A stretch of DNA of 64,000 bases from Paraphysomonas bandaiensis (GCA_965644295.1 CBFFRP010000298.1:434001-498000), one strand, 5' to 3'; counted from the stretch's first letter, positions 31,758 through 49,811 are shown. Made by a program: numbers and translations. The notes: generated by a model from the letters alone, not told the origin.

Positions 31758-32966
<1,209 letters not shown>

Positions 32967-35877: not shown

Positions 35878-36669
35878 TTACTCTTCCACCATGCCAGCCA
35901 CTTTCAGGTGCGAGTTATCGAAAAAGTTCTACATTGGACATTATGTTAAAATAAAAAAGACAATACATGAGCATAGTTATTACCTTGACGAGAGAGGCAG
36001 CACCATGAGAAGGTGGCTTGTACTCAGTTCCCCAAGCATCACTGCCAATTTCAGTGCTTGATGGGCGATAAGGGCCGACCTTTCTTTCCCTATCAGGCGT
36101 GGATTTATAAAATCTGTCGCGCGTGGACTTTGGATCAAATTCCGTCACTTTATTGCGGCCAATATCATATAGAGTTTCTCTTCTCCAAGTTCCAGAAGCA
36201 GACAAATATTCCTTTGGCGGGGCAGATGATGCTCTGTCAACATCCCCAAGGTCAATGGTTTGATTATTTTTCTTAAACATTGAGGCCTCTTTGCGAATAC
36301 TCTGGCGATATTGTTCAGTACGAATTGCACTGGTAAACTCATCTCTTCTATGAGCATCCTTACTTCCAAATCCCTTCTGTCGCTTTTCAAGAGGCTGAGT
36401 AGTCAAGTACATATTGGATTCCTTAAAGGCCGAGGGAACATACGTAACTTTCCCGAAGTTTCCGTTTTGTGCATTCATTGGTCTCAACTGCACCGAAACA
36501 ATTAACTTATTAATCACCTTACTATTACTCATACCTTGACAGTAAATGATTTCTCACCCTTCTTGTCTTGTCTGAACATGTTGGCAAGGGGGTCCTTGTA
36601 GGGGTCATTGATAGTGATGTACTTCCCCCCCTCCACATAATTCTTATTCACAAGCTTTGTAGAATACAT
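35878..36669 (-). CDS. Uncharacterised basic protein, possibly flagellum-associated, 3 exons
   Basis: Spliced ORF MYSTKLVNKNYVEGGKYITINDPY...KGFGSKDAHRRDEFTSAIRTEQYR...NFFDNSHL. The YITINDPY motif loosely resembles the CFAP96/C4orf47 N-terminus; that assignment is tentative. Confidence 0.6.
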
Positions 36670-37264
36670 ATTAAATAAAACTAATCTTGTCTTATAATAC
36701 AAATATGTTACTTTAGGACAGCTATATAATGCAGTGATTAGTTCTAAGAGTGTGTTGTTAGAAGCTGTGCATATGCATCATATGCATCGCTGAAATTTAC
36801 ATGCAGCTTATGACGACAAGTCTACTCCTCTGTGTAACTGCCGTGTGATCTGTAGTTGGTGTATGGTACAGTGGAGTAATCCGTAAACGGATTATAGACC
36901 GTATGTAATGTATGGTACCGGATGTATTCTTGTAGTTTATACTGTTGTGTATACCAGTATACTGTCTAGGAATTTCTACAGACTCCATACACATGTACAG
37001 CATACAGCAGTAGGAATTTCTGTGCTATATACTGTTTCGTACCCGTACACTTATACAACAGTACTAATAGTGGAGTACATCGTCCACACTGCTATATACA
37101 TACAGCAGTTCTGCTGTGAGCAGTTACTGACATACATGTACTTCTATACCACGTATACGTGTACATGCATACTGCTACAGGAGCCCCCAATAGATGCGTT
37201 GCATTTCACTGTGCAGTCCCACACTCATAACATAATCTAGAAACTAGATATAAATAGATTGCAA

Positions 37265-40200
37265 ATGGGGATCGGCTTGTCTGTGGAACTCCCATATGTG
37301 TTATCTGAGATCAGAGCATGTAAGACACATGAATTTACGGTGTATTATCTCCTATATATGCTAATATATGGGATATCGTGTAGGGCCATGGGATCGTGTT
37401 GAAACTATCATAAATAAGTTTCTAACCGAAGAATATCAGTTTGGACTGAGTTCTGGTGATATTCAGGAGCTCACTGGACTTGATTCGGAGAAATCAGAAG
37501 AGTTAGCGGGATGCTTATCGCGTAACAAACACAGATCGTGAGTGCAGTCGATACATATATATAGAGCACTGACATCTTCTTATAGGGTCAATGGGGTTGT
37601 TGCATTGTGTACCTTAGTAATGATTGCAGACAAACCATCAGCTTCTATAGATGTTCGCAAAAAGCGAGTATTTACGATCATGGACTTCAATGGTTTGGGT
37701 CATATAACAATGGATGAATTGGTACTAGTTGCTTTACGTTATAGTATTGCATAAAAGTAGTTTCACAGGAAATTCTCCTGTTTTGTGTTGCAGTTTCTAG
37801 TGCTTGTATACTCCAACGAAAGTCTGAGATACCAAAGTCACAGCAGATAAGATCCATAGCAGTCAAAGTTGCTGAGCGCATGGGGAAATCCCGAAACTCT
37901 GTCATCACCGCCGAAGAGTTTGTGGAGTGGGCCGAAGATGTGGCGCGAAACTCCCCAGAGTCAACAATATATGATGTGTTTAGATATTTTGTCCCAGACA
38001 AGGCAATAATATCCGATACAAACAGTGATGTGGGTCATATAAATGGGAGTATTAAGCATGAAGAGAGTGTTGATTCAAAAGGTGCTACTGATTCCGCAGG
38101 TGCTGTCGACAAGAAGGATGCTTCTGAAACGAAATCTGTTGATGCGCCGGGTACTGCGGAGGTTGACACTAAGATTGATGTATCTGGCAATGTGGTTGCT
38201 GATATAAAGTCTGCTGATGCAACGAATAATGCTGCTCCTGACAATTCTGCAGTTGACGCCGTCACGAAGGATGCTACTGACGGCTCCTCTGAAACAAAGT
38301 CTGTTGATGCGCCGGGTACTGCGGAGGCTGATACTAAGACTGATGTATCTGACAATGCGGTTGCTGATATAAAGGCTGATGATACAGCAGCAATATCTGC
38401 TGCTGATAATTCCGCAGCTGGTGCCGACACGAAGGATGCTACTGACGGCTCCTCTGAAACAAAGTCTGTTGATGCTCCTGGTGATGCGGATGCTGACACA
38501 AAAGCTGATGTATCTGACAATGCGGTTGCTGATATAAAGGCTGCTGATACAGCAGCAATATCAGCTCTTGAGAATTCCGCAGCTGGTGCCGACGCGAAGG
38601 ATGCTACTGAAACAGAGGCCGAAAGAGGAGAAAAAGGTATCAGTATACGAATTGAAATTCTCACAACTAATTTCAATATAGTTACTGATAAAAAAGAGGT
38701 TGATGAAGATAGTTTGAAGTATCCCGCTTTTACTGATAGTCATATATCCTTAATGCGGCAAAATCTAACTCCAGAGATGTTTGAGAATATGAAACATCGT
38801 CATACAGCCAGTGGAGTAGGCCTCATGGCACACATTCAGAGTGGTGTTAATGTGCCCTCTGCTGAAGTTGGGCTGACCGCAAGTGAAAACGAGAGCTATG
38901 ATACCTTCAAAGAAATATTTGATGCTGTTATTGAAGGTTATCATGGTGTGAGCTTATCAGGAGCTGACAGCGTACACGTATCGAACCAGGATAGCTCTGA
39001 GTTGGAGCGGATGGAAAACATTGATTATAACTACGTTATTTCTAGCCATTTGAGGTCTGTTAGGAATGTGAAGGGTCACCAGTTTCCCACCTCGATAAGT
39101 TCATCTGGCCGTCTGACTCTGGAATCCGCCTTGATGGATTCATTAGTGTCTATGAAGGGGGAGTTTTCTGGCACATATCAGAGTCTGCGAGACCTTGGAG
39201 CAGATGAGAAGCAGAGACTGGTGAACAATGGATTACTACCTTCCGCCCCCGCTGACAACTCACCGTATGGAAGTGCGGGTGTGGGAAGGGATTGGCCTGA
39301 TGGTCGTGGAGTGTTTAGTAATGGATCCAGTGAGTTTGCGGTGTGGATAAATGGAAATGACCACATCAGTGTGATCTGTCAGAACCAAGGGGGCGATATA
39401 TCAGCCGTATTTGAGGATTGGATCGGTGCTACGAATAGCATTGAGAGGTGCATGGTGTCAAGTGGGATGGAATTTGCCATGAGCGACCGCTTAGGCTACT
39501 TGACAACTTGTCCTTCGAATGTGGGGACCGGTTTGCGTGCGAGTATGGTGGTTCGTCTCCCTGCATTGGGGAAAAAGGAGCCTGAGTTACATAAACTTTG
39601 TGCGCAATGCGGCCTGACAGCACGTCGTGTTGATGGATCGGAAGACCACTGGGAACTTGGTAATAAGGCAACATTGGGCAAGACGGAGTTGGAAATTGTT
39701 CAGATGATAGTAGACGGTGTGGCAGTTGCTATTGCTCGAAATAAGGAAATCGAGGAAGATAGTTTGAAGTATCCCGCTTTTACTGATAGTCATATATCCT
39801 TAATGCGGCAAAATCTAACTCCAGAGATGTTTGAGAATATGAAACATCGTCATACAGCCAGTGGAGTAGGCCTCATGGCACACATTCAGAGTGGTGTTGA
39901 TGTGCCCTCTGCTGAAGTTGGGCTGACCGCAAGTGAAAACGAGAGCTATGATACCTTCAAAGAAATATTTGATGCTGTTATTGAAGGTTATCATGGTGTG
40001 AGCTTATCAGGAGCTGACAGCGTACACGTATCGAACCAGGATAGCTCTGAGTTGGAGCGGATGGAAAACATTGATTATAACTACGTTATTTCTAGCCATT
40101 TGAGGTCTGTTAGGAATGTGAAGGGTCACCAGTTTCCCACCTCGATAAGTTCATCTGGCCGTCTGACTCTGGAATCCGCCTTGATGGATTCATTAGTGTC

Positions 40201-42904
40201 TATGAAGGGGGAGTTTTCTGGCACATATCAGAGTCTGCGAGACCTTGGAGCAGATGAGAAGCAGAGACTGGTGAACAATGGATTACTACCTTCCGCCCCC
40301 GCTGACAACTCACCGTATGGAAGTGCGGGTGTGGGAAGGGATTGGCCTGATGGTCGTGGAGTGTTTAGTAATGGATCCAGTGAGTTTGCGGTGTGGATAA
40401 ATGGAAATGACCACATCAGTGTGATCTGTCAGAACCAAGGGGGCGATATATCAGCCGTATTTGAGGATTGGATCGGTGCTACGAATAGCATTGAGAGGTG
40501 CATGGTGTCAAGTGGGATGGAATTTGCCATGAGCGACCGCTTAGGCTACTTGACAACTTGTCCTTCGAATGTGGGGACCGGTTTGCATGCGAGTATGGTG
40601 GTTCGTCTCCCTGCATTGGGGAAAAAGGAGCCTGAGTTACATAAACTTTGTGCGCAATGCGGCCTGACAGCACGTCGTGTTGATGGATCGGAAGACCACT
40701 GGGAACTTGGTAATAAGGCAACATTGGGCAAGACGGAGTTGGAAATTGTTCAGATGATAGTAGACGGTGTGGCAGTTGCTATTGCTCGAAATAAGGAAAT
40801 CGAGGAAGATAGTTTGAAGTATCCCGCTTTTACTGATAGTCATATATCCTTAATGCGGCAAAATCTAACTCCAGAGATGTTTGAGAATATGAAACATCGT
40901 CATACAGCCAGTGGAGTAGGCCTCATGGCACACATTCAGAGTGGTGTTGATGTGCCCTCTGCTGAAGTTGGGCTGACCGCAAGTGAAAACGAGAGCTATG
41001 ATACCTTCAAAGAAATATTTGATGCTGTTATTGAAGGTTATCATGGTGTGAGCTTATCAGGAGCTGACAGCGTACACGTATCGAACCAGGATAGCTCTGA
41101 GTTGGAGCGGATGGAAAACATTGATTATAACTACGTTATTTCTAGCCATTTGAGGTCTGTTAGGAATGTGAAGGGTCACCAGTTTCCCACCTCGATAAGT
41201 TCATCTGGCCGTCTGACTCTGGAATCCGCCTTGATGGATTCATTAGTGTCTATGAAGGGGGAGTTTTCTGGCACATATCAGAGTCTGCGAGACCTTGGAG
41301 CAGATGAGAAGCAGAGACTGGTGAACAATGGATTACTACCTTCCGCCCCCGCTGACAACTCACCGTATGGAAGTGCGGGTGTGGGAAGGGATTGGCCTGA
41401 TGGTCGTGGAGTGTTTAGTAATGGATCCAGTGAGTTTGCGGTGTGGATAAATGGAAATGACCACATCAGTGTGATCTGTCAGAACCAAGGGGGCGATATA
41501 TCAGCCGTATTTGAGGATTGGATCGGTGCTACGAATAGCATTGAGAGGTGCATGGTGTCAAGTGGGATGGAATTTGCCATGAGCGACCGCTTAGGCTACT
41601 TGACAACTTGTCCTTCGAATGTGGGGACCGGTTTGCGTGCGAGTATGGTGGTTCGTCTCCCTGCATTGGGGAAAAAGGAGCCTGAGTTACATAAACTTTG
41701 TGCGCAATGCGGCCTGACAGCACGTCGTGTTGATGGATCGGAAGACCACTGGGAACTTGGTAATAAGGCAACATTGGGCAAGACGGAGTTGGAAATTGTT
41801 CAGATGATAGTAGACGGTGTGGCAGTTGCTATTGCTCGAAATAAGGAAATCGAGGAAGATAGTTTGAAGTATCCCGCTTTTACTGATAGTCATATATCCT
41901 TAATGCGGCAAAATCTAACTCCAGAGATGTTTGAGAATATGAAACATCGTCATACAGCCAGTGGAGTAGGCCTCATGGCACACATTCAGAGTGGTGTTGA
42001 TGTGCCCTCTGCTGAAGTTGGGCTGACCGCAAGTGAAAACGAGAGCTATGATACCTTCAAAGAAATATTTGATGCTGTTATTGAAGGTTATCATGGTGTG
42101 AGCTTATCAGGAGCTGACAGCGTACACGTATCGAACCAGGATAGCTCTGAGTTGGAGCGGATGGAAAACATTGATTATAACTACGTTATTTCTAGCCATT
42201 TGAGGTCTGTTAGGAATGTGAAGGGTCACCAGTTTCCCACCTCGATAAGTTCATCTGGCCGTCTGACTCTGGAATCCGCCTTGATGGATTCATTAGTGTC
42301 TATGAAGGGGGAGTTTTCTGGCACATATCAGAGTCTGCGAGACCTTGGAGCAGATGAGAAGCAGAGACTGGTGAACAATGGATTACTACCTTCCGCCCCC
42401 GCTGACAACTCACCGTATGGAAGTGCGGGTGTGGGAAGGGATTGGCCTGATGGTCGTGGAGTGTTTAGTAATGGATCCAGTGAGTTTGCGGTGTGGATAA
42501 ATGGAAATGACCACATCAGTGTGATCTGTCAGAACCAAGGGGGCGATATATCAGCCGTATTTGAGGATTGGATCGGTGCTACGAATAGCATTGAGAGGTG
42601 CATGGTGTCAAGTGGGATGGAATTTGCCATGAGCGATCGCTTAGGCTACTTGACAACTTGTCCTTCGAATGTGGGGACCGGTTTGCGTGCGAGTATGGTG
42701 GTTCGTCTCCCTGCATTGGGGAAAAAGGAGCCTGAGTTACATAAACTTTGTGCGCAATGCGGCCTGACAGCACGTCGTGTTGATGGATCGGAAGACCACT
42801 GGGAACTTGGTAATAAGGCAACATTGGGCAAGACGGAGTTGGAAATTGTTCAGATGATAATAGACGGTGTGGCAAAAGTAATTACTTTTGAGAAAGATAA
42901 CTAA
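37265..42904 (+). CDS. Probably N-myristoylated EF-hand protein with an acidic linker and four tandem ATP:guanido phosphotransferase (phosphagen kinase-like) domains
   Basis: 5' exons give MGIGLSVE and EF-like DFNGLGHITMDE. Each domain has IQSGVD, ESYDTFKEIFD, GRDWPDGRGVF, RLGYLTTCPSNVGTGLRAS and LGKTELE. Confidence 0.85.
38123..38612 (+). repeat. Three 165-bp (55-aa) Ala/Asp/Thr-rich coding repeats
   Basis: SETKSVDAPG starts at 38123, 38288 and 38453. Confidence 0.85.
38705..42874 (+). repeat. Four near-identical 1050-bp tandem units, each one kinase-like domain
   Basis: Units start at 38705, 39755, 40805 and 41855. Differences seen only at about 38849, 40587, 42637, 42860 and the end of copy 4. 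Confidence 0.97.
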
Positions 42905-48085: not shown

Positions 48086-49811
48086 ATGAGTACCCTCTGC
48101 CAGAATTATCTCCAATATCTACAAAACGATTCCAATGGCACAGATGCAACCCCGTACCCCTCCGTGTACTGGTGCCCCCCCATAGGTCCTCCGGAAAGTG
48201 TTAGTGATGCATGTAGAGGTGTGCTGGCTATATGGGATGCACATCAACAGACAGGAGCATCTCTAGGGCTTGTGGATGGACGTATTGCTGATGCGGTTAA
48301 TGCAGCCAAACATATATCATCTCAATGCAAACTTGAGTTCACTCGTGCTAGAGGAAGGGTGAATAGATATGAGGGGATAGGCAAAGGCCCCCCACACTGC
48401 AGGTTCATAAACAGATCTGCAATTAAAATGGCTAATATGAACGGCTTATTTCGGCTCAATGAGTTATGTGATCGTTCTATTGACCGCTTTACGTTTGTGG
48501 ATCTCTGTGGTGGACCGGGCGGGTTCTGTGAGTACTTCTTGCGCACGTTTCAGGCAAAACACATATTGGGCTTTGCAATGTCGTTGGTTATCGATGCTAA
48601 CAGTACAGCCTCATCTTGTAATTGGGATTTAGATCACATGCATGATCCTCCGCACACAGCTGTCTTGGGAATTGAAGGGGATCACATTCAAGCTGCACGG
48701 AAGTTGTTTATTCTTGATGGAGTTGATGGCACTGGAGATTTATTTCTGAAGGCTAATGTCGATTACTTATGTGAATTCGTGCACTCGAAGCTGTCTGTCA
48801 GTGACTGTTGTGACGGCTATGGAGGTGTCGACTTCGTATGTGGAGATGGAGGTAGCGGAGAGGGACGAGATCGTGAGGACCAGGAGCTTGTTATGCTGCC
48901 CTTGCTCATCTGTCAAGTAGTTGCAATGCTGGGAGTGCTCCGAAAAGGAGGGGATTTTGTTCTCAAGACATTTACCATGCACCAGGTGTATATATGATTG
49001 CTACTGATAGTATTTACTTTTTTTTAATCTGTTTTGTTAGCCGATTACTGTGGGGATGGTACATTTACTTTCCCAGCTCTTTGACAAAATTGCAATTGTG
49101 AAGCCGGTGAGCAGCCGCCCCACCAGTAGCGAGCGGTATATCTACTGTCGCAATCTTCGACACTTAGAGAGGGAAGAAAGAAATCATCTTCAGAATTTTT
49201 TATGGAAAGCATGTGGCGCTTTTCGAACCAGAGATTATTCACGTATGATATCACCGCTTTGTAAACTAATATGGTAATGATTTCTCCGTGTTAGTTTCCA
49301 GCTTCGGTAACTCAGACCACGTGAAGGTCATACCTGACTGTGCGACTCCACTGATAAATTATATTAGGCAATGCAACGAGGCATTGCTTTTCGTACAGGT
49401 AATATCTTCTCCTCTTAAATTACTATGTCTGATTCTTGTTGGTGGTAGCTGAGCCACTTTCTACAGGCGTTTGTGTGTGTTTGTGACGAATATGCTTTTG
49501 AGTTCAGTGTTACTGATATCAAGAATATGTTGAATTTATTATCTAAAATTCGCACCAGAATACCTATGGATCGAGAATGTATCGATGAAGATACCCATGA
49601 TAGGGAAATAGATGTACCACCACGTAAGAAGCGTATGCTCGTCAGAAATGACTACAAAACAAATTATGATGAGCAGTGTCCTACATTTCACTGCTGTTTC
49701 CTTGTTCTACATCAGATTTTACACGCAATGAATAATGAATTTTTTAGACAGTTGCTTTGTTCCAACTCAGTCTCCTCTAATGACTATTATGATTTATGGG
49801 AGCTGTATTGA
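48086..49811 (+). CDS. FtsJ/RrmJ-fold cap-specific mRNA 2'-O-methyltransferase (CMTR1-like), multi-exon
   Basis: FINRSAIKMANM, FVDLCGGPGGFCEY, CGDGG, GGDFVLKTF and KPVSSRPTSSERY provide the K-D-K-E tetrad. Confidence 0.85.

What the first reader, a model, noticed from the sequence alone, without database searches (positions are those of the whole stretch)
37265..42904. Membrane-anchored EF-hand protein with four catalytically degenerate phosphagen-kinase domains (candidate Ca2+-responsive pseudo-enzyme)
Seen: an MGxxxS myristoylation-type start, EF-hand-like exons, a 3x55-aa acidic linker and four 350-aa arginine/creatine-kinase folds. Known: active phosphagen kinases keep RxRxxR, DH(F)LF, WxNEEDHxR, the reactive Cys in CPxNxGT, RASVH and an RGxxGE loop. 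Here they read SHLRSVR (first Arg lost), NGLLP (His lost), WINGNDHIS (both Glu and the Arg lost), RASMV (His lost) and RRVDGSE (loop shortened); only the Cys motif is intact. Myristoylated multi-domain phosphagen kinases are known from flagella (e.g. three-domain sea-urchin sperm creatine kinase), but those are active. Inference: this protein is a nucleotide-binding or structural scaffold, or has changed chemistry, under Ca2+ control. It sits head-to-head with a possibly flagellar gene.
Basis: partly seen in the sequence, partly recalled or inferred. Interest (0 to 1): 0.8.

Follow-up and report, generated by a model that had tools for sequence, protein, structure and literature searches.

The report
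Anchored four-domain dead phosphagen kinase
A marine flagellate expresses a large, probably lipid-anchored protein with four near-identical copies of the energy-buffering enzyme phosphagen kinase; the copies have lost the residues needed for catalysis yet are strongly conserved, which points to an undescribed non-enzymatic role for this well-known fold.

Summary
A four-exon gene (37265-42904, +) encodes about 1826 aa. It has an MGIGLS start, an EF-hand-like head, a 3x55-aa acidic repeat and four 350-aa phosphagen-kinase (PK) domains that are 98-100% identical in DNA. An RNA contig joins all four exons exactly. DNA k-mer depth supports four copies (4.04x).

All four domains lack the equivalents of Arg124, Glu224, Glu225, Arg229, Glu314 (loop 8 aa shorter) and Arg330. 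The genome's four other PK genes keep them all.

The gene belongs to a small monophyletic clade (Paraphysomonas, environmental contigs, one in-genome paralog). In that clade E224->G and R330->T are invariant and the other old active-site positions drift. The fold is still under strong purifying selection (dN/dS 0.08-0.09 against the paralog; AF2 pLDDT 96.5, creatine-kinase fold).

The MGxxxS start is conserved in 3 of 3 genes examined. Ca2+ control is not supported for this copy: the EF loop has Leu at ligand position 5, and only the paralog has a canonical loop.

Best reading: a lipid-tethered, non-catalytic PK-like array. I found no paper on PK pseudoenzymes.

The parts
37265..37319 (+). Exon 1: start codon and MGIGLSVELPYVLSEIRA (N-myristoylation-type MGxxxS start). 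The transcript contig begins at 37240.
   Evidence: Sequence. The RNA contig X1 record 1 covers 37240-37319 and then joins to 37384. The MGxxxS start is conserved in the paralog (MGVGNS) and in an environmental relative (MGNSNS).
37320..37383 (+). Intron 1 (64 nt, GT..AG)
   Evidence: Joint 37319->37384 in the RNA contig. The intron is retained in the DNA contig.
37384..37537 (+). Exon 2: helical head segment (WPWDRVETIINKFLTEEYQFGLSSGDIQELTGLDSEKSEELAGCLSRNKHRS)
   Evidence: Homologous exon in the paralog (30% identity, E=1e-8) and in L020. No Pfam hit.
37538..37585 (+). Intron 2 (48 nt, GT..AG)
   Evidence: Joint 37537->37586 in the RNA contig.
37586..37721 (+). Exon 3: EF-hand-like helix-loop-helix. 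The loop DFNGLGHITMDE lies at 37683-37718 and has Leu at ligand position 5.
   Evidence: Pfam EF-hand_6 E=0.014, 15.6 bits, below the cut-off. The paralog exon has the canonical loop DIDNSGYITMDE, EF-hand_1 E=1.4e-5, 24.7 bits.
37722..37768 (+). Intron 3 (47 nt, GT..AG)
   Evidence: Joint 37720->37768 (cut +1, so equivalent to 37721->37769) in the RNA contig.
37769..42904 (+). Exon 4: rest of the head, acidic linker, four PK-like domains, stop at 42902-42904
   Evidence: Open frame. RNA contigs of X1 cover parts of it. Marine poly(A)/cDNA metatranscriptome runs X4 and X9 each hold a 1080-nt contig over it, with 0 (X4) and 4 (X9) differing letters.
37883..37918 (+). Second, non-canonical EF-like loop (GKSRNSVITAEE), partner of the exon-3 EF-hand
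   Evidence: Read from the sequence. Gly at loop position 1. No Pfam hit. The segment is conserved in P0001, P0002 and P0004 and in the paralog (41% identity).
38123..38610 (+). Acidic tandem repeat, 3.0 x 165 nt (55 aa), the core of a 227-aa linker with pI 4.05
   Evidence: Tandem Repeats Finder, 88% matches. Composition.
38690..39739 (+). PK-like domain 1 (PF02807 + PF00217), catalytic signature H124 R126 G224 N225 S229 C271 R280 R309 T330, with a shortened loop and no E314
   Evidence: AF2 pLDDT 96.5. Creatine-kinase fold, TM 0.88-0.92.
39740..40789 (+). PK-like domain 2. Same signature, except His at the Arg280 equivalent.
40790..41839 (+). PK-like domain 3
41840..42901 (+). PK-like domain 4 and the C-terminal tail

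Best explanation
This is a real, transcribed gene of a marine heterokont flagellate (Paraphysomonas or a close relative). It encodes an approximately 1826-aa protein built of four parts:

1. An N-myristoylation-type start (MGIGLS).
2. A helical head of about 190 aa holding a degenerate EF-hand pair.
3. A flexible acidic repeat spacer.
4. Four near-identical creatine-kinase-fold domains, kept alike by concerted evolution.

The domains are pseudoenzymes. They keep the fold but have lost both Glu that polarise the guanidinium group and three of the six Arg that hold the phosphates. They should therefore not transfer phosphate between ATP and a guanidino compound.

Most likely the protein is held at a membrane by its lipid anchor and presents four non-catalytic PK-like modules on a flexible tether, as a docking or regulatory platform. 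The flagellar or plasma membrane is the likeliest site, by analogy with myristoylated flagellar CK and AK. Function would then reside on surfaces other than the old active site.

Shown here: gene structure, expression, copy number, residue losses, clade membership, purifying selection, intact fold.
Inferred: loss of activity, myristoylation, membrane or flagellar location, scaffold role.
Ca2+ regulation is unlikely for this copy and possible for its paralog.
For: **Gene model and expression.** An RNA contig joins all four exons, and the gene appears in marine poly(A) metatranscriptomes.

**Copy number.** Depth ratio 4.04 supports four copies.

**Family and fold.** Pfam finds four PK domain pairs. 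PDB sequence hits reach E=1e-106. The AF2 model has pLDDT 96.5, and Foldseek gives TM 0.88-0.92 to creatine kinases.

**Residue losses with an internal control.**
- This gene reads H124/G224/N225/S229/no E314/T330.
- The genome's own C414, C78b, C297 and C96 PKs keep R124, R126, E224, E225, R229, C271, R280, R309, E314 and R330.
- Glu225, Glu314 and Cys271 are described as essential, and Arg124/126/229/309/330 as phosphate ligands, in PMC11075012.

**Clade.**
- It is monophyletic (SH-aLRT 100) on a long stem of 0.99.
- E224->G and R330->T are present in 10 of 10 members.
- The E225, R229 and R309 sites vary freely.
- 19 of 35 universally conserved structural positions are kept.

**Selection.** dN/dS is 0.08-0.09, with dS about 1.9, against the C78 paralog.

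**Membrane heads recur.**
- MGxxxS is found in 3 of 3 genes where the first exon could be read.
- Clade members P0001, P0006 and P0094 carry a C2 domain.
- The more distant degenerate 4-domain proteins P0095 and P0096 carry a PH domain.

**Anchoring machinery.** The genome encodes N-myristoyltransferase and a Unc119/PDE6delta-family carrier. TbAK3 reaches the flagellum through Unc119 in a myristoylation-dependent way (bioRxiv 10.1101/2020.05.07.083568).
Against: - No biochemistry exists. Inactivity is inferred from residues.
- This gene still keeps Cys271, Asn274, Arg126, Arg309 and, in three of four domains, Arg280. Nucleotide binding, residual activity or a changed activity therefore cannot be excluded.
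- Myristoylation is predicted from a motif only.
- There are no localisation data. The flagellar link is by analogy plus a weak neighbour lead.
- No partner is known.
- The full-length transcript was not seen as a single molecule. Contigs break in the repeats.
Confidence: 0.6

Rival explanations
1. Ligand sensor or buffer. The domains no longer catalyse transfer but still bind ADP/ATP or a phosphagen or guanidino compound. They would report or buffer local energy state at the membrane. In the paralog a functional EF-hand would add Ca2+ input.
For: This gene keeps Arg126, Arg280 (three of four domains), Arg309, Cys271, Asn274 and the GTG turn. The fold, including the N-terminal specificity-loop region (EVGLTA..ESY), is well conserved.
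Against: Across the clade none of these ligand positions is invariant. R126 reads R/Q/E, R280 reads R/H, R309 takes seven different residues, and C271 reads C/S. A conserved binding pocket would be expected to hold them. Both Glu that grip the guanidinium are gone.
Confidence: 0.2
2. Still an enzyme. The domains would be active kinases or phosphotransferases with a rebuilt active site or a new substrate, for example a protein or another small molecule.
For: Strong purifying selection. Clade-specific invariant residues appear (N99, DSSEL 101-105, R107, Q231, D243, W321, K331). Cys271 is kept here.
Against: Positions lining the old pocket vary freely within the clade, which does not fit a shared new catalytic site. 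Three of six phosphate-binding Arg and both catalytic Glu are missing. McsB-type protein arginine kinases lack PF02807, and they match this domain only weakly (E about 1e-17 to 1e-20).
Confidence: 0.1
3. Prozyme-type partner of the active kinases. CK-type PKs are dimers. The dead domains would pair with the organism's active PKs (MGAGAS-type C414/C78b or the five-domain C96 protein) to dock or regulate them.
For: The best structural matches are dimeric or octameric creatine kinases. The same genome has four catalytically intact PK genes. Dead paralogs that control active ones are a known theme in protists (own knowledge: trypanosomatid prozymes).
Against: There is no direct evidence. The active single-domain PKs carry their own MGAGAS anchor, so they need no docking. 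The four tandem domains may simply pair with each other. No complex prediction was run, because homology to solved CK dimers would make a pass uninformative.
Confidence: 0.1
4. Artefact or decaying gene. The four copies would be an assembly duplication, or the locus a recent pseudogene.
For: The copies are almost identical, and short-read contigs collapse them.
Against: Depth ratio 4.04. The paralog also has exactly four domains. The frame is intact over 5.1 kb, the gene is expressed and spliced, and dN/dS is 0.08-0.09.
Confidence: 0.02

Closest known systems
[quoted passage not shown] 1997, cited in PMC3080659)
   Same: Several complete CK-fold domains in one polypeptide behind an N-terminal myristoylation site. 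Lipid association of a phosphagen-kinase array.
   Different: That enzyme is catalytically active. Here all four domains lack E224, E225, R229, E314 and R330 equivalents. This protein also adds an EF-hand-like head and an acidic repeat spacer.
Myristoylated flagellar arginine kinase TbAK3 of Trypanosoma brucei (PMC4517888; bioRxiv 10.1101/2020.05.07.083568), and the genome's own MGAGAS-type PKs (C414, C78b)
   Same: MG-type start on a PK-fold protein in a flagellate. Unc119-family carrier and NMT genes are present in this genome.
   Different: Those are single-domain and keep all catalytic residues (for the in-genome ones). TbAK3 belongs to the AK group, whereas this clade is CK/TK-like.
Two-domain arginine kinase of Anthopleura japonica (PDB 4rf6) and two-domain taurocyamine kinase (PDB 4wo8)
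   Same: Best sequence matches among solved structures (E=1e-106 and 1e-100). Contiguous PK domains.
   Different: Both domains of those enzymes carry the canonical RxR, NEEDHxR, CPxN..R and RG..GE motifs in the alignment.
C78 paralog in the same genome (C78:96374-103648, minus strand; first-reader note s1-452977)
   Same: Same exon structure and intron phases. MGVGNS start, EF-like head, acidic repeat spacer, four 350-aa domains with the same losses. 73-75% aa identity per domain.
   Different: Canonical EF loop (DIDNSGYITMDE). Spacer of roughly 900 aa made of units of about 98 aa, against 227 aa here.
N-myristoylated EF-hand proteins (recoverin/NCS family, trypanosome calflagins/FCaBP)
   Same: MG start followed by a helical EF-hand-containing module of about 190 aa. 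There is a faint FCaBP_EF-hand hit for the paralog exon (E=0.12).
   Different: No significant family match. Only one recognisable loop, and it is degenerate in this gene. The module is fused to a 1600-aa tail. A Ca2+-myristoyl switch was not tested.

Membership tests
ATP:guanido phosphotransferase (phosphagen kinase) superfamily, by homology and fold | N-terminal helical domain (PF02807) plus C-terminal alpha/beta domain (PF00217) | tested here: met
   Four copies of each: PF00217 E=6.1e-186 and PF02807 E=2.1e-88. AF2 pLDDT 96.5. Foldseek TM 0.88-0.92 to creatine kinases.
Functional phosphagen kinase (EC 2.7.3.x) | Acidic pair in NEED(H): Glu224 and Glu225, which bind the guanidinium | tested here: not met
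   Gly and Asn in all four domains. 100% Glu-Glu in 42 canonical PKs.
Functional phosphagen kinase (EC 2.7.3.x) | Phosphate-binding arginines (Arg124, 126, 229, 280, 309, 330 in Limulus AK numbering, assigned by motif) | tested here: not met
   His124, Arg126, Ser229, Arg280 (His in domain 2), Arg309, Thr330. Three of six are lost. Roles are taken from PMC11075012.
Functional phosphagen kinase (EC 2.7.3.x) | Flexible RGxxGE loop carrying Glu314 | tested here: not met
   The loop is 8 residues shorter and reads ARRVDGSE, with no aligned Glu314.
Functional phosphagen kinase (EC 2.7.3.x) | Reactive Cys271 and Asn274 in CPxNxGT | tested here: met
   CPSNVGTG in all four domains. Cys is replaced by Ser in 6 of 10 clade members.
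Functional phosphagen kinase (EC 2.7.3.x) | Phosphotransfer activity | not testable with these tools
   Needs an enzyme assay.
EF-hand Ca2+-binding domain | 12-residue loop with oxygen ligands at positions 1, 3, 5 and 12, Gly at 6 and a hydrophobic residue at 8, scoring over Pfam's cut-off | tested here: not met
   DFNGLGHITMDE has positions 1, 3, 6, 8 and 12 right but Leu at position 5. It scores 15.6 bits against the 25-bit cut-off. The second loop has Gly at position 1. Exons were scanned apart, so the pair as a whole was not scored.
N-myristoylated protein | Met-Gly start with a small residue (Ser/Thr) at position 6 | tested here: met
   MGIGLS. No upstream ATG lies in the transcript contig from 37240. 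The motif is conserved in the paralog and in L020. An NMT gene is present.
N-myristoylated protein | Covalent myristate on Gly2 | not testable with these tools
   Needs mass spectrometry or metabolic labelling.
McsB-type protein arginine kinase (the automatic name of some relatives) | PF00217 core without the PF02807 N-domain, and a retained catalytic Glu | tested here: not met
   PF02807 is present four times. McsB structures match only at E=1e-17 to 1e-20, against 1e-106 for AK. The Glu is lost.

The most novel reading that the evidence does not exclude
Catalytically dead phosphagen-kinase domains would form an undescribed, widespread class of protist pseudoenzymes. They would be built as arrays of one to five domains behind membrane-targeting heads (myristoyl/EF-hand, C2, PH). 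They would act at the flagellar or plasma membrane as docking or allosteric ('prozyme'-like) partners of the active phosphagen-kinase shuttle, or as energy-state sensors. In this organism one Ca2+-sensitive paralog and one Ca2+-insensitive paralog would divide the task.
Probability: 0.2. Interest if true: 0.8.

Novelty: new variant of a known kind. Interest (0 to 1): 0.62.

Why it matters
Phosphagen kinases (creatine and arginine kinase) are a textbook enzyme family. Every characterised member, including the multi-domain and myristoylated flagellar forms, is treated as an active energy-buffering enzyme. Here a conserved, expressed and strongly constrained clade keeps the fold but has given up the catalytic residues.

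A signature scan was run on 157 proteins: the 150 best profile hits among 1.84 billion representatives plus the nine multi-domain hits, two proteins being in both lists. It suggests that degenerate PK-like domains are common in uncharacterised multi-domain protist proteins: 83 all-degenerate and 16 mixed by my 10-residue criterion. They often sit behind C2 or PH heads. Four full-text searches on phosphagen-kinase pseudoenzymes or inactive domains returned nothing.

If confirmed, this adds a pseudoenzyme branch to the family. It would warn against annotating such genes as creatine or arginine kinase. It would also give a concrete handle, a lipid-anchored four-module array, on how flagellates organise energy supply or signalling at membranes.

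Tried and rejected
- **Shallow AF2 model.** AF2 with only the 9 clade sequences gave a poor model (pLDDT 61). It was replaced by a 71-sequence alignment.
- **'His lost' arguments.** I rejected them because the genome's intact PKs have KGF and Met at those positions, and Phytophthora's intact PK also has Met at the His284 position.
- **Full-length word search.** The 1711-aa exon-4 product found no close multi-domain relative, only distant ones at 27-33% identity. The tool is length-limited, so the later profile search was used for absence claims.
- **Pfam blanks.** Nothing for exon 2, the start of exon 4, or the upstream neighbour's pieces.
- **Neighbour gene.** The language-model search gave only sub-threshold leads (0.81) to ciliary microtubule-inner-protein families. 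The flagellar label was not adopted.
- **Literature.** Searches for 'phosphagen kinase' with 'pseudoenzyme', 'guanido phosphotransferase' with 'pseudokinase', and 'contiguous/inactive domain' returned nothing.
- **Complex prediction.** None was sent.
- **Spliced protein.** Exons were searched apart by reference. The head as a whole (a possible four-EF-hand, NCS-like module) therefore remains untested.
- **Organism identity.** It was not pursued beyond the best named hits.

Full report
**1. What is there**

The region holds one long open frame, 37880-42904, of 1674 aa. Pfam finds the two phosphagen-kinase (PK) domains, PF02807 and PF00217, four times each, with E=2.1e-88 and 6.1e-186. The four domains are 1050-nt tandem copies starting at 38690, 39740, 40790 and 41840.

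Copies 2 and 3 differ by a single nucleotide (Arg283His). Otherwise the copies differ at one further residue (N54D in copy 1) and at the outer edges of the first and last copy. A 165-nt unit repeated 3.0 times (38123-38610) encodes the core of an acidic spacer: 227 aa, pI 4.05, 50 Asp+Glu.

**2. Gene model and expression**

Reading the three forward frames upstream gave a GT..AG model with four exons:
- Exon 1, 37265-37319, starting MGIGLS.
- Exon 2, 37384-37537.
- Exon 3, 37586-37721.
- Exon 4, 37769-42904.

The introns are 64, 48 and 47 nt. Public reads settle the model. An 894-nt contig of run X1, from the same organism label, covers 37240-38292 and skips exactly these three introns. A 4.8-kb contig of run X20 is collinear with the genome. 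The EF-hand-like exons and the kinase array therefore form one mRNA.

Two marine poly(A)/cDNA metatranscriptomes (X4, X9) each hold a 1080-nt contig of the array, with 0 and 4 differences. In X20 the collapsed repeat contig has depth 370.9 against 91.8 for the unique flank, a ratio of 4.04. That fits four genomic copies, though contig depth is a rough measure.

Exons were searched one by one by reference.

**3. Are the domains catalytically degenerate?**

The alignment to solved two-domain arginine kinase (4rf6) and taurocyamine kinase (4wo8), and a residue table against canonical PKs, give the status of each catalytic position. Limulus AK numbers are assigned by motif, and their spacing agrees with the residue list in PMC11075012.

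| Position | This gene |
|---|---|
| Arg124 | His |
| Arg126 | kept |
| Glu224 | Gly |
| Glu225 | Asn |
| Arg229 | Ser |
| Cys271, Asn274 | kept |
| Arg280 | kept (His in domain 2) |
| Arg309 | kept |
| RG..GE loop | 8 residues shorter, no Glu314 |
| Arg330 | Thr |

PMC11075012 describes Glu225, Glu314 and Cys271 as the essential residues gripping the guanidinium. It describes Arg124/126/229/309/330 as holding the phosphates.

The decisive control is internal. The same genome has four other PK genes:
- C414 and C78:276158, both starting MGAGAS.
- C297, with a presequence-like N-terminus.
- A five-domain gene on C96.

All of these keep every one of the ten residues above. They also read KGF instead of DHF and Met instead of His284.

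**4. A clade, not a one-off**

The word search found seven proteins at 47-60% identity: Paraphysomonas MMETSP1107 and environmental contigs. They share the losses and stand well apart from the next hit, 558-623 bits against 327 bits.

A profile search of 1.84 billion representatives added only P0094 (C2 plus two such domains) and a fragment or two. The family as a whole has 5841 hits.

A tree places the clade as one branch (SH-aLRT 100, stem 0.99). Within it the domains cluster by gene. The four copies are therefore kept alike within each gene, by concerted evolution or recent amplification.

Against 42 canonical PKs, 35 positions are at least 95% conserved. The clade keeps 19 of them, the structural Gly/Pro/Trp type. 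It has lost or freed 16, including all the direct catalytic ones:
- Glu224->Gly and Arg330->Thr are invariant (10 of 10).
- The Glu225 site reads N/E/L/P/T.
- The Arg229 site reads S/C/I/R/T.
- The Arg309 site takes seven different residues.
- Cys271 is Ser in six members.

This pattern is a maintained fold with a relaxed old pocket. It fits a function carried by other surfaces better than a rebuilt active site or a conserved ligand pocket.

**5. The paralog and selection**

Contig C78 carries a paralog with the same exon structure. It has an MGVGNS start, an EF-like head, an acidic spacer of roughly 900 aa made of units of about 98 aa, and four 350-aa domains with the same losses.

Domain by domain the two genes are 73-75% identical in protein. 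dN is 0.155-0.171 and dS is 1.84-1.97, so dN/dS is 0.08-0.09 by NG86, with dS near saturation. The head is far less conserved (30-41% identity) and the spacer differs fourfold in length. The PK-like domain is therefore the most constrained part.

The domain folds confidently with a 71-sequence alignment (pLDDT 96.5, pTM 0.92). It superposes on creatine kinases at TM 0.88-0.92, about 2 A.

**6. The head**

Exon 3 holds one EF-hand-like loop, DFNGLGHITMDE. Positions 1, 3, 6, 8 and 12 are canonical, but ligand position 5 is Leu. Pfam scores it below threshold (EF-hand_6, 15.6 bits against 25).

The paralog's exon reads DIDNSGYITMDE, fully canonical. It scores 24.7 bits against 25.4 even though the exon cuts the motif. 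An environmental single-domain relative (P0002 on L020) has the same upstream exons, with an MGNSNS start and a loop DYNNLQRISADE, again with Leu at position 5. The second loop, in exon 4 (GKSRNSVITAEE), is non-canonical.

So Ca2+ binding is not a conserved property of this head, and it is unlikely for this copy. The MGxxxS start is conserved in all three genes where exon 1 could be read.

Other heads in and around the clade are also membrane-binding. Clade members P0001, P0006 and P0094 carry C2. The more distant degenerate four-domain proteins carry PH; one of these, P0095, comes from the chrysophyte Mallomonas annulata.

The genome encodes N-myristoyltransferase and a Unc119/PDE6delta-family carrier. 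In T. brucei a myristoylated arginine kinase reaches the flagellum through Unc119. Sea-urchin flagellar CK is myristoylated (reference in PMC3080659).

**7. Mechanism**

*Shown:* a spliced, expressed, four-copy gene; loss of residues required for phosphoryl transfer; a conserved clade; strong purifying selection; an intact fold; a conserved MG start.

*Inferred:*
- The domains do not catalyse guanidino phosphotransfer (I put this at about 0.85).
- The protein is N-myristoylated and membrane-bound (about 0.6).
- It acts as a tethered, non-catalytic platform rather than as a ligand sensor or a new enzyme (about 0.5-0.6 of the remaining probability).
- The membrane is flagellar (about 0.35, by analogy only).

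The rivals are listed with their tests.

**8. Context**

The divergent upstream gene (start near 36669, minus strand) has no Pfam match. It has only sub-threshold language-model leads to ciliary microtubule-inner proteins.

The genome holds only six PK-like genes, with 16 domains in all.

**9. Novelty**

I ran a 10-residue signature scan on 157 proteins: the 150 best profile hits plus the nine multi-domain hits, two proteins being in both lists. It classed 83 proteins as all-degenerate, 16 as mixed and 58 as canonical. My threshold was at most 6 of 10 canonical residues. Loop columns may be misaligned in divergent sequences, and the profile favours degenerate sequences.

Four full-text searches found no paper on PK pseudoenzymes. 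The library is incomplete, so this is not proof of absence.

I file the gene as a new variant of a known kind: a homologue of phosphagen kinases that fails the family's functional tests.

A follow-up had described the C96 five-kinase gene and suggested Paraphysomonas (s1-452792).

Noticed in passing
G000:C78:96374-103648 (minus); loci L013 and L014: Paralog with the same architecture, but a canonical EF-hand loop (DIDNSGYITMDE) and an acidic spacer of roughly 900 aa made of about eight units of about 98 aa. The two paralogs may differ in Ca2+ sensitivity and in tether length.
   Followed up: yes
window 35915-36669 (minus strand): Divergent neighbour gene (exon 1 MYSTKLVNKNYVEGGKYITINDPYKDP..., then a 205-aa ORF with GFGSKDAHRRDEF). 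It has no Pfam hit. Language-model leads at 0.77-0.81 point to small ciliary microtubule-inner-protein families (PIERCE1/2, CFAP90, FAM183, CFAP68).
   Followed up: partly
window 36670-37264: The roughly 600-bp region between the two divergent start codons is rich in TACA/TGTA-type words (for example tatac, gtaca, tacagcag). Another first-reader note in this genome (s1-440934) describes a (TACA)n tract between divergent starts elsewhere.
   Followed up: no
G000:C414:25067-26416 (minus) and G000:C78:275426-276886 (plus); loci L017, L018: Two nearly identical single-domain, catalytically intact PKs start with MGAGAS. This is also a myristoylation-type start, so they are likely the lipid-anchored active kinases of this organism.
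   Followed up: partly
proteins P0082, P0083, P0085, P0095, P0096 and others: Many uncharacterised three- to five-domain PK-like proteins in public protist and metagenome data have partly or wholly degenerate catalytic signatures. P0095 (Mallomonas annulata) and P0096 put a PH domain in front of four such domains.
   Followed up: partly
protein P0084: A 1246-aa protein labelled Rmarinus combines two canonical PK domains with adenylate-kinase (PF00406) and MORN (PF02493) domains. This looks like a fused energy-shuttle module.
   Followed up: no
window 32461-32883 (minus) and 48086-48997 (plus): Flanking ORF pieces match enoyl-CoA hydratase (ECH_1, E=1e-21) and an FtsJ-like methyltransferase (E=2e-14). 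These are ordinary neighbours.
   Followed up: no
window 40586-40588 (domain 2, codon 283): This is the only internal difference between domains 2 and 3: Arg->His at the Arg280 equivalent. The same site is split evenly between Arg and His across the clade (5 of 10 each). Short-read contigs collapse the repeats, so the difference could not be checked.
   Followed up: partly
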